Source: Fonticula alba ATCC 38817
Taxonomy: Eukaryota; Protista; Nucleariida
DNA: 30,748 bases
Assembly: GCA_000388065.2 (NCBI GenBank)
Contig: KB932211.1
Direction: 5' to 3' (one strand)
Part shown: piece after piece, positions 17,641 to 24,091 of the stretch
How the letters are laid out: the number at the start of each line of letters is the position of its first letter
Numbering within the stretch: position 1 is the stretch's first letter
Notes under the pieces: generated by a model
The model's input: the letters and a program-made list of their open reading frames with translations, nothing else
Told to the model about the DNA's origin: nothing
The model's database searches: none
Program-made: the position numbers and the translations under genes

Positions 17641-18280
17641 CTGTGCGAGCGTCTCGGGTGACAAAGGGCCAGCCGAGGAGAAGAAAGCAAGAAAAGGAGA
17701 GAGAGAGAGAGAGAGAGAGAGAGGAGCACAGGTACGATGGCTTCCCCGGTGTCGTTGACCTTCCGGCCACGGCGCCCCGCTTTCGCTCCCTCGCGCCCTC
17801 CACACACCGGCCCTCGCTTTTTGCTGGCCGGAGGCCGAGACACCGGCGCCCTCCGGAGGAGACCCCCCCCCCCCCGCCCGAGAGCCCAGCCCGAGCGCAC
17901 ACACACCGGGCTTGATCAAAACAAGCGACACGCCCGGGAGCGGGGGCGGCGGCCGCCATGTCGCGTATCACGCCCGGCCGGCAGCTGACGCGCCAATGGC
18001 ATTCCGCATGCTGACAACGCACGGCGCGCCCGATCGAACGTGGACCTTCTCGACGCCTCGCCCGGCCTGCGGCCGGCCGGCGATCCGACCCGGCCTGCGG
18101 GCCCACTTTCGGAGGCCGCGCCAAAACAACCCCTTTTTTCCGCCACACGCCTGCCCCCCCTTGCGCCCCGGCAACAGGGGCACCCCATTCCCACCCGATT
18201 CGCCTCCCCTCCCTCCCCATCCCGCCCCCCCGCCCTTGCCAGCGCCCATCCCCCCCCCCCCTCCTCCCCCCCTTGACAAC

Positions 18281-21183
18281 ATGATCCGCTCTGTCACCGT
18301 CGGCCTCCGCGCCTCTACCTCGCCCCTGGTCCGCCGGGCCGGGCCACCGACCACCACCCCGGCGGCCGCCTACTCCGGCATCGGCGCCCGGCTCAAGGGC
18401 ATGTTCGGCGGCTCCGGCTCCAGCGAGCCCGCGCCCGAGGCCGCCGACGCCTCTGCCAAGCCCAAGTCCTCGCTGCTGGACTCGCTGATGAACATGGGCA
18501 GCGGGCTCACCTCCGGCATGGGGCAGATCATGTCCAAGAGCATCACCCCGGAGATGCTCCGCCAGCAGGCCCAGGAGCTCACCGTGCCCAGTGCGTGCCC
18601 CCTCGCCACCCGCTCGCATCGCCCTCTCCCCTCATCCGTCCTTTGCCCTCCTTTTCTTTCCCCTCCCGGCTCACCCGCCCACACACTCGCATGGCGCCGG
18701 CCGCAGAGTACATCGAGTTCATGGAGAAGTCCCAGTCCGGCATGGCCTCCAAGGTCGCGAGCTTTGTCAACCCGGCGGCCGCGGCGGCCGCCAGCTCCGG
18801 CGAGCTGCAGAAGCGCCAGCTGGCCGTCCTCAAGTACCTGACGCCGGACGAGGCCGACAACATCGCCAACCTCACCCGCGGCCAGATGGAGGTCATTGCC
18901 AACCGCACGGGCCAGGGCCTGGTTGTACGTGCCGCGCCCGGGTCTTCCGCTGCTCCCCCGCCCCCTCCCCCCCCCCCCCTGCTCAGGGGTCTTGCTCTTT
19001 TGCCTGCCCTGCCCTGCCACTCCAACTCACCCGCGTCCCATGCCCGACTGCCTGGCTTCCGGAAGGCCGTCAGCGAGGCCATCCAGGCGTACAGCTCCAT
19101 TCGCATGTTCATCCACTTCCTGGCCCACTGCAAGGAGTGCGTTCACCGCCACTGGCTCGCGATCCCCGGGCTTTCCCCCTCTCNNNNNNNNNNNNNNNNN
19201 NNNNNNNNNNNNNNNNNNNNNNNNNNNNNNNNNNNNNNNNNNNNNNNNNNNNNNNNNNNNNNNNNNNNNNNNNNNNNNNNNNNNNNNNNNNNNNNNNNNN
19301 NNNNNNNNNNNNNNNNNNNNNNNNNNNNNNNNNNNNNNNNNNNNNNNNNNNNNNNNNNNNNNNNNNNNNNNNNNNNNNNNNNNNNNNNNNNNNNNNNNNN
19401 NNNNNNNNNNNNNNNNNNNNNNNNNNNNNNNNNNNNNNNNNNNNNNNNNNNNNNNNNNNNNNNNNNNNNNNNNNNNNNNNNNNNNNNNNNNNNNNNNNNN
19501 NNNNNNNNNNNNNNNNNNNNNNNNNNNNNNNNNNNNNNNNNNNNNNNNNNNNNNNNNNNNNNNNNNNNNNNNNNNNNNCCCTCTCTCTCTCTCTCTCTCT
19601 GTCGTATGCGCCCTCGAGCTGCCCATCGCCGAGACCCGGCCGGCACGTCCCCGGCCTGTGCGGCTCGCACTGACCGATCGCCGCCGGAACCGTGACCCCT
19701 CCCGCCGGCCGGCCCACCGGGCAGACGAGATGGACAGCTACATGTTCCAGACAATCGCCCACTCGGCCATCCCCCTGTACGAGGAGTGCCTGGCGCACGC
19801 CGGGGTGCCGCTCTTCCGCGAGCCGATCACCGGCCGGCCGGTCCAGACGGCCATGGACTACGCGGCCGCCACCGAGGCCGACGAAGTGGAGGACCTCTTC
19901 CGCCTGCTGTCACGCGTCAAGGACGCCATCCCCTCCCTGCAGGCGGTCTGCTCCGGGGCCATCCTCTCGGACTACCAACGCCTGCGCGTGGAGAATGTGT
20001 ACGCCCGCGCCCCGGCCCGCCGGCCCTGGCCCACGCCGAGCCAGGCCGCCTGCCTGCCCTGTCCCCCACCTGACACCTGTGCCCGCCTTCCCCCCCCCCC
20101 CCCCCCCCCCCCCTGGCCAAGCTGCCGGCGCCTCGACCTCGTGCCGCTGGCCCCGCTGTGGGCCCTGCCCCAGGCGGCCCTGGTCCCGCGCATGATCGCC
20201 GCCCCGCTGGACGCCGTCCTGGTCAAGGTGGCCGCCATGGGCCTGGTCCCGCGGCGGCACCTTGGCATGACTCTCTCGGCCATCTGGCCGACCCTCATGC
20301 GCCTGGTGCGCGCCCGCCCCCACGCACCTCTCCGTGTCCATCCCCCGGCCTGACACTTGCATGCCTGCGCCCTTCCCTCCCTCTCCCGGATGCACACACG
20401 CACACTCCCAACCCCAGGGCGACATGTACGGGCTGAATGTCGCCGGCGAAGGCGGCGAGTACGAGACCCTGGTGCTGGACGCCCCCTTCTTCTCGCGGCG
20501 GATTGTCCTGTGCGTGCTGCTCGACGATGTCGGCCCGGGCTCCCGGCCGTCNNNNNNNNNNNNNNNNNNNNNNNNNNNNNNNNNNNNNNNNNNNNNNNNN
20601 NNNNNNNNNNNNNNNNNNNNNNNNNNNNNNNNNNNNNNNNNNNNNNNNNNNNNNNNNNNNNNNNNNNNNGGCCGAACGCCCGCCGCAGAAACAACATCGA
20701 GGTGTCCGATGACCCGAACGAGATGAAGAAGCTCTTCGCCAAGATGGCGCCGGATCTCATTCGCCAGGTGCAGATGACCCCCATCCGCCGGAGCGCCTCC
20801 CTGGGCCAGAGCAACACCCTGCCCAATCTGGTGGCCAAGCGCGTGCGTATCCACCGGCCTCGTGGCTACCAACCTCCTGCTCCTCCTCTGTTCCTGCTCC
20901 TCCTTATTTCTCCCTGCCGGCCATCGGAGGGGCGATGGCGTCCTGACATGCCTGACCCCCACACACACGCACACACACACACACACACATACACACACAC
21001 CCGCGACACTCACACCTCGCTCGATCCTCCACCCGATGGGCCCCTCCCATGGCTCTCCCCCTCTTTGGCCCCTCCGTGCCTTGCATGATCGCCACGCCCC
21101 CGCAGGTCATCGGCCCCAACGACCCGTGCCCCTGCGGGTCCGGGCAGAAGCTGAAGAAGTGCTGCAAGCCCGGCCGCAAGTGA
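18281..21183 (+). CDS. 276-aa predicted mitochondrial protein: presequence, SRP54/Ffh M-domain (signal-peptide-binding)-like region and C-terminal SEC-C zinc-binding motif. Exons 18281-18590, 18707-18924, 19066-19136, 20689-20842, 21106-21183
   Basis: Four GT-AG introns with matching phases (1,0,2,0). QKRQLAVLKYLTPDEADNIANLTRGQMEVIANRTGQGLVAVSEAIQAYSSIRMF aligns without gaps by eye to the recalled Ffh M-domain pattern. The last exon is VIGPNDPCPCGSGQKLKKCCK. The exon 3-4 join crosses two N gaps. Confidence 0.75.
19184..19578. other. Assembly gap (395 N)
   Basis: N run. Confidence 1.
19725..20509 (+). CDS. DPH6: Diphthine--ammonia ligase, exons 2-4 (19725-19998, 20122-20305, 20418-20509), on a gap-flanked contig that is out of order
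   Basis: DEMDSYMFQT...DEVEDLFRLLSRVK...AVCSGAILSDYQRLRVENV|CRRLDL...LW...LVKVAAMGL...HLG|GDMYGLNVAGEGGEYETLVLDAPFF are the conserved DPH6/ATP-binding-4 motifs. Intron phases match. Confidence 0.93.
20552..20669. other. Assembly gap (118 N)
   Basis: N run. Confidence 1.
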
Positions 21184-21595
21184 GCGCGCCCCCGCTTGCG
21201 GCCTCGCCTTTCCGTCGGGGGAAGGGGGGAGAGGTGCCTTCCTTCTTTCTTTCCTCCTCCCTCCCCGCCCCCAGCCTCCGGCCAAGGGGCACCACGCGCC
21301 GCCCTCGCCAGCACGCCCTGCCCCCTGGAAATAGACAAGCAACACATCACACACGGAGACACACGGAGACACACGCCCACGCACCCACACGCCCTGAGCC
21401 CACAATCAGAAACCGCGTTGACCACGTGGAACATGGCCGCTGGGCCGGCGCCGTGCGCCAATGAGCCCCCGCCCCGGACCGGGGGCAGGGACGCCCCACA
21501 AGGCCCCCTCCCCCGACACCGCCACCGCCCCCCCCCCCCTCCGCCCCCTCCTCGCCCTTTTCGCACCCTCTAGCACCCCTCTCCCGGATCCCACG

Positions 21596-21719
21596 ATGCA
21601 AGTCTGCGCCCTGATCAGCGGCGGCAAGGACTCGCTGATGGCCATGAACCTGGCGCTCCAGGATGGCCACGCGATTATCGCCCTGGCGAACCTCTTCCCG
21701 CCGGTCACTCACGGATCGG
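21596..21719 (+). CDS. DPH6: Diphthine--ammonia ligase, exon 1 (PP-loop)
   Basis: MQVCALISGGKDSLMAMNLALQDGHAIIALANLFPP carries the SGGKDS PP-loop of DPH6. The phase-1 donor GTGCGT at 21720 joins the phase-1 acceptor at 19725. Confidence 0.93.
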
Positions 21720-21731
21720 GTGCGTAGCTGG

Positions 21732-22177
21732 NNNNNNNNNNNNNNNNNNNNNNNNNNNNNNNNNNNNNNNNNNNNNNNNNNNNNNNNNNNNNNNNNNNNN
21801 NNNNNNNNNNNNNNNNNNNNNNNNNNNNNNNNNNNNNNNNNNNNNNNNNNNNNNNNNNNNNNNNNNNNNNNNNNNNNNNNNNNNNNNNNNNNNNNNNNNN
21901 NNNNNNNNNNNNNNNNNNNNNNNNNNNNNNNNNNNNNNNNNNNNNNNNNNNNNNNNNNNNNNNNNNNNNNNNNNNNNNNNNNNNNNNNNNNNNNNNNNNN
22001 NNNNNNNNNNNNNNNNNNNNNNNNNNNNNNNNNNNNNNNNNNNNNNNNNNNNNNNNNNNNNNNNNNNNNNNNNNNNNNNNNNNNNNNNNNNNNNNNNNNN
22101 NNNNNNNNNNNNNNNNNNNNNNNNNNNNNNNNNNNNNNNNNNNNNNNNNNNNNNNNNNNNNNNNNNNNNNNNNNNNN
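21732..22177. other. Assembly gap (446 N); probable true location of the 19579-20551 contig
   Basis: N run between DPH6 exon 1 and the last DPH6 exon. Confidence 0.95.
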
Positions 22178-22209
22178 GCCCCCCCCCCCCCCTCCGCTCG
22201 TCGCTTCAG

Positions 22210-24091
22210 TGCCGAGACGGCCGTCGAGTATGACGATGGCAACCCGGATGTCGCACACCTGCGCATCTTGCGCGCCCACACCGAGCCCAAGGAGCAGGGC
22301 ACCTTCTGGCCGGCGGCCGACCAGGCCCCCGGGCCCGGGGTCCTGCAGCGCCCGGCCAGCCCGCACTGGCCACTCGCCGACCCGGCCACCGCGGCCGCGT
22401 GCCCGGCCATCGCGGCCGAGCTCGGGTACCTCTGTGCCCTGCCCGGGCCGGGGCTTGGGGCGGTGGCCCTGCGGGACCGGCCGTCCGAAGCGCCGGCCTG
22501 CGCCCCGGCCGCGTGGCCCTCCCCCGGGGTGGCGGCCCTGCCAGCCTGGCTGGCCAGCTCAAGCCCGCGCGTCATCCGCGGCCGGGGCTTCGCCGTGGCC
22601 ACCGGCCTGGACTCGGGCCCCGTCCCGGGGGCCGGGCCCGCCGGCGAGTCGGCCGCCGAGCGCCTGGTGGCCCGCGCCGCCGCCCTCCTGGCCGAGGCCG
22701 GGCTTGACCTGGCCCACTCGGCTCGCTGGACCCTGCACACCTGGCTCCCGGAGGGGGGCTCCGCCTGCTCGGCCGCTCGGCAGGCCTTCCACCGCGATGT
22801 CACGCGCCTGGTGGCAGCCATCCCCGGAAGCCCCTCCCCCCCGGCGGTGGGCTTCCTGCCGCCGATGCCGCTGGCCGGGCTCGGCCCGGATGCCGGCCCG
22901 GTGTTCGGCCTGCATGTTCTGCTGGTGACCGATCGGTCGGTCAGTCGTGATGCCCTGTCGGCTGGGAGCCTCTCCTACTGGCTGCCGCCGGCCCCGGCCG
23001 GGGCCTCCCTGGCGTCGGTCATTCGCCCGGACACCTCGGTCGGGCCTGAGTCCGGGCCCGGGGCCCGGGGGCTGGCCGTGGCCTCGGCCTTGGAGGCCCG
23101 GCTGCCGCACACCGGCCAGCCGGCCGCATGCCACTGCCCGGGGTTCCGCTTCGCCCTGGTCGCCCGGCATGCGGCCCTGCTGGCTGACCGCCTATGTGAC
23201 CTGTGGCCTGGGGCCTTTGCCCGGCGGACGCCGGTGTGCGCGGACTTCGCCTGCTGGCCGGCCACCTCCCAGGTGTTGGCCGCCCATGCGGCTGGCTGCG
23301 CGCATGCCCTGGCCCATGCCCTGCTCCCGGGCAGCCATTCCCCCGACCGCCCGGGCGGCGACTCGTCGGCCTATGACCAGGACGAGGAGGACGAGGACGC
23401 CCCGGCCCCCCCGGGCCGGAGCTTCGGCCACCTCCTGGCCGGGACGGCCTTCCACCTGGCCGGGCTGCTGACCGACACGCAGGCTGCCCTCTGCCGGGCC
23501 ATCTGGACCGGGGCCTTCGCCGACCGGGGCATCGCCGCCCCGCCGGCCGTTGTGTGCGCCGGGGCCGGGGCCGACTTCCTGGACGCCTGCCACCCGGTGT
23601 TTGCCGGCCTGCCGGCCGGGCCCCCGGCTGCCAGCCCGACTTGGTCCCCGGCCGACGACGGGCAGCGGCTCCTGCCGGCCGGCGCCGGTCTCTGGCTTCA
23701 CCGCGGCCCGTCGAGCGTTGTGCTGTCGCTGGCCGCCGAGGGCCCGGCGCTGCCGAGCCTGGAAGACGCCCTGCGCGCTGTGGCCCGGGCCTTCGGCCAT
23801 CTGGCCGCCGCGGACCGGCTGTCGGTCATCGACTCTACCTGGCACCTGGCCAGGGAGGGCCTTCCCCTGGAGGAGGAGGGCGCCTGGGCCGCCGGCCTCG
23901 GCGGGTCGCCGCTGGAGCACGGCACCCGTGCGGTGGCCAGCCAGATCCACCTGCTGGCTGACGGCGCGCCCGCTTGGCTCCGCCTTTCGGACCCCCCTGC
24001 CCAGGCGGACCGCCATGTGCCTGATGCGCTGCCGGCCGGCCACCGGCCCCTGCTGGTGTGCACGGTGCTCGTGGAGGAGCGCCTGCCCTGA
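22210..24091 (+). CDS. DPH6: Diphthine--ammonia ligase, last exon: end of the ATPase domain plus a long C-terminal extension with degenerate RidA/YjgF-like regions; reconstructed protein 851 aa
   Basis: CAG acceptor at 22207-22209 is phase 2 and completes ...RRIVL|AETAVEYDDGNPDVAHLRILRAHTEPK. LLAEAGLDLAH and LSAGSLSYWLPP resemble the RidA-like extension of fungal Dph6. TGA at 24089-24091. Confidence 0.82.

What the first reader, a model, noticed from the sequence alone, without database searches (positions are those of the whole stretch)
18281..21183. Mitochondria-targeted stand-alone Ffh/SRP54 M-domain fused to a SecA SEC-C motif
The spliced product has three parts: a presequence (MIRSVTVGLRASTSPLVRRAG), an M-domain-like region (LTVPKYIEFM...QKRQLAVLKYLTPDEADNIANLTRGQMEVIANRTGQGLVAVSEAIQAYSSIRMF), and GPNDPCPCGSGQKLKKCC. 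By eye the core aligns without gaps to recalled Ffh (RMEAIINSMTxxER...IIxxSRxxRIAxGxGxxVxDVNRLLKQFxxM), keeping R, A, hydrophobic-T, E, IA, G and the hydrophobic periodicity. There is no NG GTPase domain. The protein therefore joins the signal-sequence-binding domain of the SRP pathway to the C-terminal metal-binding motif of SecA, which contacts SecB and ribosomes in bacteria. This suggests a vestigial signal-peptide-recognition factor on the mitoribosome or inner membrane. From memory, mitochondrial Ffh/FtsY and an M-domain-related mitochondrial protein (MAP67) have been reported in some protists, so this may be an orthologue; its presence in this lineage and the SEC-C fusion need checking.
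Basis: partly seen in the sequence, partly recalled or inferred. Interest (0 to 1): 0.85.

Follow-up and report, generated by a model that had tools for sequence, protein, structure and literature searches.

The report
Fonticula MAP67/mL105 with SecA-type tail

Summary
Transcript contigs from four runs (two samples) join five exons with GT..AG introns: 18281-18590, 18707-18924, 19066-19136, 20689-20842 and 21106-21183. Together they give one in-frame 276-aa protein. Both assembly gaps lie inside intron 3, and no exon is hidden there.

The last exon is a canonical SEC-C motif (Pfam 8.7e-9; CPCGSGQKLKKCC). No sequence search supports the M-domain (Pfam SRP_SPB, phmmer, BLASTP all negative), but structure does. 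An AlphaFold model of residues 55-199 matches SRP54/Ffh M domains at Z up to 12.0 and Polytomella mitoribosomal mL105 at Z 11.2. Unrelated chains start at Z 4.

The window is Fonticula alba. Residues 1-199 are identical to H696_05454 / XP_009497555.1, which Pyrih et al. 2021 already list as a MAP67 family member. So the family, the architecture and this gene's membership are known.

Two points are new:
- The public 212-aa model ends in a false exon taken from a mis-ordered scaffold piece (19579-20551), which belongs to the DPH6 gene downstream.
- The true protein carries the SEC-C tail, which that paper reports only for Chloroplastida.

Interest is modest.

The parts
18258..18280 (+). 5' untranslated part of exon 1 (transcript contig begins at 18258)
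   Evidence: X1 record 1 covers 18258-18570 without mismatch
18281..18590 (+). Exon 1 coding part, residues 1-103 plus one base. It holds the predicted presequence (about residues 1-48), a Met-rich low-complexity stretch (residues 60-98) and the start of the M domain (from about residue 99)
   Evidence: Joint 18590>18707 GT..AG in X1-X4; composition; identical to P0001
18591..18706 (+). Intron 1 (116 nt, GT..AG)
18707..18924 (+). Exon 2, residues 104-176: core helices of the M-domain-like fold
   Evidence: model pLDDT about 80-92 for residues 134-194
18925..19065 (+). Intron 2 (141 nt, GT..AG)
19066..19136 (+). Exon 3, residues 177-199 plus two bases: last long helix of the M domain
   Evidence: Joint 19136>20689 GT..AG in all four runs
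19137..20688 (+). Intron 3 as assembled (1552 nt). It holds both N gaps (19184-19578, 20552-20669) and the contig 19579-20551 that belongs to the neighbouring DPH6 gene. The real intron is probably much shorter
   Evidence: Transcripts skip it whole. The contig carries Diphthami_syn_2 profile positions 63-198, while positions 1-34 lie at 21596-21718
20689..20842 (+). Exon 4, residues 200-251: post-M-domain segment and linker, absent from the public gene model
   Evidence: By eye it resembles the conserved segment after the M domain in other MAP67 proteins of Table S7
20843..21105 (+). Intron 4 (263 nt, GT..AG)
21106..21183 (+). Exon 5 coding part, residues 252-276 and the TGA stop. The SEC-C metal-binding motif CxCx8CC is at residues 259-271 (21127-21165)
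   Evidence: Pfam PF02810 8.7e-9, profile 2-19 of 19; motif match; SecA/YchJ zinc-domain peptides
21184..21344 (+). 3' untranslated region (at least to 21344)
   Evidence: X2 record 7 covers 21182-21344

Best explanation
The locus is the Fonticula alba orthologue of MAP67, called mL105 in mitoribosome structures. It is a nuclear-encoded 276-aa protein made of a mitochondrial presequence, a divergent Ffh/SRP54 M domain without the NG GTPase (about residues 99-199), a roughly 55-residue linker and a C-terminal SecA-type SEC-C metal-binding knuckle. Shown here: the five-exon mRNA, the open frame, the SEC-C motif, the M-domain fold of the model, and identity of residues 1-199 to the protein listed as Fonticula MAP67. 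Inferred from published structures of homologues (Tetrahymena, PMC7326499; Polytomella, PMC9576764): the M domain sits at the exit of the mitoribosomal large-subunit tunnel, where Ffh M sits on bacterial ribosomes. Its last helix reaches toward the tunnel and the nascent chain. There it helps couple synthesis of hydrophobic mtDNA-encoded proteins to the Oxa1 insertase, without SRP RNA or a GTPase cycle. That fits loss of SRP RNA binding. More speculative: the SEC-C tail binds zinc or iron and gives a second anchor, to the ribosome near the exit or to acidic inner-membrane lipids, as the same motif does for SecA. The public 212-aa model misses the tail because a scaffold piece was placed in the wrong gap.
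For: Splicing and frame. Organism and identity to H696_05454. SEC-C. M-domain fold: the AF2 model has pLDDT 68.8 overall and about 90 for residues 134-194. Foldseek's top PDB hits are almost all SRP54/Ffh M domains or mitoribosome chains. VIA gives Z 12.0 to SRP54 M (4xco_C), 11.2 to Polytomella 8apn/8a22 chain Ub over 100 residues at 2.5 A, 8.2-8.4 to Tetrahymena and Toxoplasma mitoribosome chains, and unrelated rows only from Z 4.0. Chain Ub is mL105. AFDB clusters and the ESM Atlas likewise return SRP_SPB proteins, and the Atlas holds a eukaryotic cluster carrying SRP_SPB plus SEC-C. Literature: Table S7 of PMC8321541 lists XP_009497555.1 as Fonticula MAP67 with TargetP M(2). Presequence-like N-terminus and no membrane-spanning stretch.
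Against: No sequence method used here links the protein to any relative. Pfam SRP_SPB gave no hit even at E<=10. phmmer over 1.84 billion representatives found only the protein itself, as did two word-indexed searches. BLASTP and Smith-Waterman against E. coli Ffh M were not significant. The model was made from a single sequence, and its first 35 residues are unreliable. Foldseek E-values are weak (0.08 and above), and helical folds give middling Z by chance. I could not run the family-profile membership test, so that step rests on the 2021 paper. Localisation, ribosome binding and metal binding are untested in this organism. The RNA runs are labelled 'RNA?' and are small assemblies.
Confidence: 0.85

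Rival explanations
1. It is not an orthologue of MAP67. It is an independently truncated mitochondrial Ffh that lost its NG domain in the Fonticula lineage, and so resembles MAP67 by convergence.
For: The model matches Ffh/SRP54 M domains as well as it matches mL105 (Z 12.0 against 11.2). No sequence similarity to any MAP67 was detectable here. Pyrih et al. themselves say MAP67 is too divergent from Ffh M domains for a conventional phylogeny.
Against: The authors' MAP67 searches picked up this protein. By eye, the segment after the M domain (exons 3-4) follows the pattern seen in other MAP67 proteins but not in Ffh. The SEC-C tail is shared with green-lineage MAP67. mtFfh is known only from four protist lineages, none close to Fonticula.
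Confidence: 0.06
2. The helical core is not homologous to the M domain at all. The protein is one of many small proteins of unknown function that end in a SEC-C motif, and the fold match is a chance helical arrangement.
For: All sequence-based tests for SRP_SPB are negative. Foldseek E-values are 0.08 or worse. The tool's note says helical models can reach Z of about 13 by chance.
Against: The match is highly specific. The first 31 VIA rows, the great majority of the top Foldseek PDB hits, most of the named AFDB hits and most of the Atlas rows are SRP M domains or mL105, followed by a sharp drop to Z 4. An independent profile-based study lists the protein in the family.
Confidence: 0.05
3. The exon 3-exon 4 joint is an artefact, either a chimeric transcript assembly or trans-joined contigs, and the SEC-C exons belong to another gene.
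For: The runs are Logan contigs of small libraries of uncertain type. The joint spans two assembly gaps and a foreign contig.
Against: The same joint, with GT..AG ends and an unbroken frame, appears in four runs from two samples, inside contigs that also carry the other three joints. There is no start codon context or separate 5' end for exons 4-5. The resulting architecture is the one known from green-lineage MAP67.
Confidence: 0.03

Closest known systems
MAP67 family / mitoribosomal protein mL105 (Pyrih et al. 2021, PMC8321541; Tobiasson & Amunts 2020, PMC7326499; Tobiasson et al. 2022, PMC9576764)
   Same: Both are nuclear-encoded with a predicted mitochondrial presequence and an M-domain-only relative of Ffh. 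The model superposes on Polytomella mL105 at Z 11.2. This very protein, in truncated form, is listed as the Fonticula MAP67. The M domain plus C-terminal SEC-C architecture is that of Chloroplastida MAP67.
   Different: The sequence is extremely divergent: no relative is detectable by phmmer. Before the M domain lies a Met-rich, low-complexity insert (residues 60-98). The linker before SEC-C is longer, about 39 residues after the conserved segment against about 16-22 in Dolichomastix and Arabidopsis (my count from Table S7). It comes from an opisthokont, a group stated to lack mL105 in its mitoribosome (PMC13623125). It carries the SEC-C tail that the 2021 paper reports only for Chloroplastida.
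Bacterial Ffh / SRP54 M domain (Pfam PF02978 SRP_SPB)
   Same: Same helical fold (Z 9-12 to 4xco, 5gaf, 3ndb, 2ffh, 1hq1). In the alignment to E. coli Ffh 375-426 the following are kept: the leading R, the T of the 'MT' turn, E, the IA pair, a G of the GxG turn and the hydrophobic periodicity.
   Different: There is no NG GTPase domain and no Pfam hit. The basic residues R398-K399-R400-R401 of the SRP-RNA-binding motif are replaced by Q-M-E-V in that register. No SRP RNA partner is expected. The protein is targeted to mitochondria.
SecA C-terminal metal-binding domain (SEC-C, PF02810) and small SEC-C proteins YchJ/YecA
   Same: The CxCx8CC ligand pattern and the conserved G-x-N-D-P lead-in and Ser are present, with near-identity to the solved E. 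coli SecA zinc-domain peptide. The motif sits at the extreme C-terminus.
   Different: It is attached to an M domain, not to an ATPase motor or a UPF0225 domain. The aromatic residue before the last ligands (Tyr in E. coli SecA, Phe in YchJ) is Leu here. SecB, the partner of the SecA motif, is not known from mitochondria (from my own knowledge, not checked here).

Membership tests
MAP67 / mL105 | Most of the mature protein is an Ffh/SRP54 M-domain fold, with no N or G (GTPase) domain | tested here: met
   AF2 model against PDB: Z 12.0 to SRP54 M and 11.2 to Polytomella mL105, with unrelated chains at Z 4 or less. The protein is 276 aa with no GTPase family hit.
MAP67 / mL105 | Recognised by the family's sequence profile (HMM of MAP67 proteins; HHpred link to PF02978) | not tested
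   No MAP67 profile or member sequence could be brought in by reference. My single-sequence searches found no relative. The 2021 paper's own searches list XP_009497555.1 as MAP67.
MAP67 / mL105 | N-terminal mitochondrial targeting presequence | tested here: met
   The first 48 residues hold 6 K/R and 0 D/E and are rich in S/T/A. TargetP 1.1 gives 'M', reliability class 2, in Table S7. This is prediction only.
MAP67 / mL105 | Bound at the polypeptide exit of the mitoribosomal large subunit | not testable with these tools
   Known for Tetrahymena, Polytomella and Toxoplasma homologues. There are no data for Fonticula.
MAP67 / mL105 | Conserved segment just after the M domain (aromatic/hydrophobic helix end, then a short Pro-containing turn and an E-L/M motif) | tested here: inconclusive
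   By eye only. The Fonticula residues spanning the exon 3/4 joint (IHFLAHCKENNIEVSDDPNEMKKLF) line up with that segment in the Table S7 sequences. No statistics were run.
SEC-C / SecA metal-binding domain (PF02810) | Profile match above Pfam's gathering score | tested here: met
   35.5 bits against a cut-off of 20.4, E 8.7e-9, profile positions 2-19 of 19.
SEC-C / SecA metal-binding domain (PF02810) | Four metal ligands in the pattern C-x-C-x8-C-[CH], at the C-terminus | tested here: met
   CPCGSGQKLKKCC at residues 259-271 of 276. It aligns with the solved SecA and YchJ zinc-domain peptides.
SEC-C / SecA metal-binding domain (PF02810) | Binds zinc or iron | not testable with these tools
   Needs metal analysis of the recombinant tail.
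Ffh / SRP54 proper | NG GTPase domain preceding the M domain | tested here: not met
   Only a presequence and low-complexity sequence lie before the M domain. Pfam finds no SRP54 or SRP54_N.
Ffh / SRP54 proper | Sequence match to Pfam SRP_SPB and a retained SRP-RNA-binding motif (basic SRxxR before IAxGxG) | tested here: not met
No PF02978 hit at E<=10.

The most novel reading that the evidence does not exclude
The SecA-type SEC-C tail is an ancestral part of MAP67/mL105, present in the last eukaryotic common ancestor, and not an accretion specific to green plants and algae. Fonticula, on the opposite side of the eukaryote tree, would then keep the original 'Ffh M domain plus SecA tail' fusion, most other lineages would have lost the tail, and some published tail-less entries could be truncated models like this one. 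The by-eye resemblance of the stretch just before the motif in Fonticula and Arabidopsis (PDL-x-R ... NL-x-AK ... then CPC) hints at common descent of the whole tail. That resemblance is untested.
Probability: 0.3. Interest if true: 0.5.

Novelty: new member of a known kind. Interest (0 to 1): 0.3.

Why it matters
MAP67/mL105 is thought to be the last remnant of the bacterial SRP pathway on mitochondrial ribosomes, and its function is still speculative. The 2021 description concluded that two lineages independently recruited two different SecA C-termini, and a 2026 paper states that mL105 was lost from opisthokont mitoribosomes. This window bears on both statements in three ways:
- The Fonticula protein keeps a full SEC-C tail. 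The M-domain plus SEC-C architecture therefore occurs in both Archaeplastida and Opisthokonta, which reopens the choice between ancestral fusion and repeated recruitment.
- It strengthens the view that the tail has a function.
- The public gene model (212 aa) and the scaffold order are wrong here, which also breaks the neighbouring DPH6 gene.

For anyone outside this small field it is an ordinary gene of a described family.

Tried and rejected
- Pfam on each exon and on P0001:1-199 and 60-199 gave no SRP_SPB. The only sub-threshold hits, DUF6507 (E 0.02-0.04) and Glyco_trans_4_2 (E 0.035), I treat as noise.
- phmmer of residues 1-199 against the PDB sequences gave nothing relevant.
- phmmer against 1.84 billion representatives found only the protein itself.
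- Two word-indexed searches found only the protein itself, one of them with E up to 10.
- BLASTP against the E. coli Ffh M domain gave no alignment.
- Smith-Waterman picked the Met-rich low-complexity stretch and was not significant, with 24 of 300 shuffles reaching its score.
- I had noticed by eye that residues 66-84 resemble the Ffh finger loop. I rejected this as the true register, because the structural alignment puts Ffh 328-434 on residues 99-199.
- RNA runs of 'organism B' (X12, X13) laid only poly-C reads and carry nothing of this locus.
- None of the four transcript runs covered DPH6. The mis-ordering could therefore not be shown by a backward joint and rests on Pfam profile coordinates.
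- The full 276-aa spliced protein has no reference. It could not be sent to Pfam, to the homology searches or to structure prediction, so the tail was studied as separate exons.
- The stop-free stretch around exon 5 is only 75 aa, too short to fish for full-length MAP67 plus SEC-C relatives.
- The hypothesis of a nested or duplicated DPH6 fragment inside intron 3 was rejected. The downstream DPH6 gene lacks exactly those profile positions and has a gap where they belong.
Full report
**What is in the sequence.** The window is very GC-rich (about 65-79% where no gap lowers the figure) and has four N runs. The region 18281-21183 on the + strand starts with an ATG at 18281 and ends with a TGA at 21181-21183. 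The operators asked that continuity across the gaps be tested first, so I laid public transcript data on 18100-22500.

Four small runs from two samples of the window's organism hold the locus. Their contigs show four joints, all with GT..AG ends: 18590>18707, 18924>19066, 19136>20689 and 20842>21106. In run X3 one 640-nt contig carries all four joints. In X4 one 601-nt contig carries three. No extra letters lie between exon 3 and exon 4, so no exon is hidden in the gaps.

Splicing the five exons gives 831 nt, in frame, for 276 aa. Both gaps of the finding (19184-19578 and 20552-20669) lie inside intron 3. Exon 3 ends 47 nt before the first gap, and exon 4 begins 19 nt after the second.

One detail differs: exon 3 continues past SSIRMF to ...IHFLAHCK, and exon 4 (51 residues) lies between it and the SEC-C exon.

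**The piece between the gaps is foreign to this gene.** The contig 19579-20551 encodes three exons that match Pfam Diphthami_syn_2 at profile positions 63-106, 107-148 and 170-198. Positions 1-34 of the same profile lie downstream at 21596-21718 and are followed by a third gap, 21732-22177.

The simplest reading is that this 973-nt contig was put into the wrong gap when the scaffold was built. It belongs to the DPH6-like gene that starts at 21596. No transcript contig covered that gene, so I could not show a backward joint.

**Identity of the organism and of the gene.** A word-indexed search with the open frame covering exons 2-3 returned one protein: hypothetical protein H696_05454 of Fonticula alba, 212 aa. 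Its residues 1-199 equal my spliced protein. Its last 13 residues (PGRHVPGLCGSH after the E) are read from the misplaced contig. The public model therefore lacks exons 4 and 5.

**The tail.**
- Exon 5 matches Pfam SEC-C at 8.7e-9 (35.5 bits, cut-off 20.4), covering profile positions 2-19 of 19.
- The pattern CxCx8CC is at residues 259-271 of 276.
- phmmer against solved structures finds the zinc-binding peptides of E. coli and H. influenzae SecA and of YchJ, at 4e-7 to 1e-5, with near-identity over 18-19 residues.

This is a canonical SEC-C motif.

**The core, by sequence.** Every sequence method was negative.
- Pfam gives no SRP_SPB hit for the single exons or for residues 1-199 or 60-199, even at E<=10.
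- phmmer over 1.84 billion representatives finds only the protein itself.
- A second word-indexed search up to E=10 also finds only the protein itself.
- BLASTP against the M domain of E. coli Ffh (taken from NC_000913.3) gives no alignment.
- A Smith-Waterman alignment is not significant and picks a low-complexity stretch.
It is the best of all offsets, and 9 of 1000 shuffles reach it. That is a hint, not proof.

**The core, by structure.**
- *AlphaFold model.* A single-sequence AlphaFold2 model of residues 55-199 has mean pLDDT 68.8, with about 90 over residues 134-194.
- *Foldseek.* Against the PDB, Foldseek lists SRP54/Ffh M domains and mitoribosome chains in nearly all top places, though with weak E-values (0.08 and above).
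- *VIA-align.* VIA-align gives Z 12.0 to an SRP54 M domain with bound signal sequence (4xco_C). It gives Z 11.2 to chain Ub of the Polytomella magna mitoribosome (100 residues, 2.5 A) and Z 8.2-8.4 to the Tetrahymena and Toxoplasma mitoribosome chains. Z is 9-11 to E. coli, Thermus and archaeal M domains. The first 31 rows are all of this kind, and unrelated chains begin at Z 4.0.
- *Chain Ub.* This chain is mL105 according to the paper's supplementary table.
- *Other libraries.* AlphaFold DB clusters and the ESM Atlas give the same answer, and the Atlas holds a eukaryotic cluster that combines SRP_SPB and SEC-C.
The by-eye register was therefore correct.
- *RNA-binding residues.* In that register the four basic residues R398-K399-R400-R401, which precede the IA pair of Ffh's RNA-binding motif, are Q-M-E-V in Fonticula. 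That fits a protein that no longer binds SRP RNA. This is an inference.

**Other features.**
- The first 48 residues hold six K/R and no D/E.
- Residues 60-105 hold five Met in 46.
- There is no membrane-spanning stretch.

**What is known.** Pyrih et al. 2021 (PMC8321541) described MAP67, a mitochondrial family homologous to the M domain of Ffh along most of its length.
- It is present in most eukaryote groups but not found in Metazoa, Fungi, Discoba or Metamonada.
- Its members have mass-spectrometric evidence for mitochondrial location in Toxoplasma, Arabidopsis and Chlamydomonas.
- In Chloroplastida it carries a C-terminal SEC-C motif, and in Centrohelida a different SecA-like end.
- The authors conclude that two versions of the SecA C-terminus were recruited independently.
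- Tetrahymena mL105, seen at the mitoribosome tunnel exit with its C-terminal helix entering the tunnel, is a MAP67 orthologue.
- In Polytomella, mL105 occupies the position of the Ffh M domain and of mammalian mL45, and contacts a density assigned to the Oxa1 insertase.

Table S7 of the 2021 paper lists Fonticula alba XP_009497555.1 as MAP67 with TargetP 'M (2)' and no note on its C-terminus. That entry has the same 212-aa sequence as P0001. I saw no such motif in any other sequence of the table, including the other opisthokont, Syssomonas. A 2026 paper states that mL105 was lost from the opisthokont mitoribosome.

**Verdict.** Almost all of it is already published: the family, the M-domain homology, the M domain plus SEC-C architecture, and even this gene's membership.

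- transcript-backed correction of the gene model from 212 to 276 aa;
- the SEC-C tail in an opisthokont MAP67;
- the mis-ordered scaffold piece that caused the error.

Whether the tail is ancestral, separately acquired or transferred could not be decided. I could not bring other MAP67 sequences into the tools by reference. By eye, the stretch just before the motif resembles that of Arabidopsis, but this is untested.

**Mechanism.** The proposed mechanism is tunnel-exit binding through the M domain, contact with hydrophobic nascent chains, hand-over to Oxa1, and a metal-bound tail as a second anchor. It is inferred from homologues and from SecA biology, not shown for Fonticula.

Noticed in passing
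window 19579-20551, 21596-21731 and 22178-24091: A DPH6-like (diphthine-ammonia ligase) gene is split by mis-ordered scaffolding. Pfam Diphthami_syn_2 positions 1-34 lie at 21596-21718. Positions 63-198 lie upstream in the contig between the two gaps of this finding. The rest of the gene follows the third gap (21732-22177).
   Followed up: partly
window about 19638-19676: The last exon of the public model H696_05454 (…PGRHVPGLCGSH, then a stop) is read from the misplaced contig. It is not supported by any transcript contig.
   Followed up: yes
window 22178-24088 (+): A 637-aa open frame, rich in Ala, Gly and Pro, continues the DPH6-like gene. It has no Pfam hit at E<=0.1, so the domains usually found after the DPH6 N-terminal domain were not detected.
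   Followed up: partly
window 18247-18280, 18940-18980, 20079-20123: Long poly-C tracts attract reads from unrelated 2026 RNA runs filed under 'organism B' and create false joints (18272>18955, 18979>18250). Those runs carry nothing else of this locus.
   Followed up: partly
window 18458-18574 (residues 60-98): A Met- and Gly/Ser-rich stretch just before the M domain looks like the Ffh finger loop (MNMGSG...GMGQI). By the structural register it lies outside the M domain. It could be low-complexity chance or an extra hydrophobic-peptide-binding flap.
   Followed up: partly
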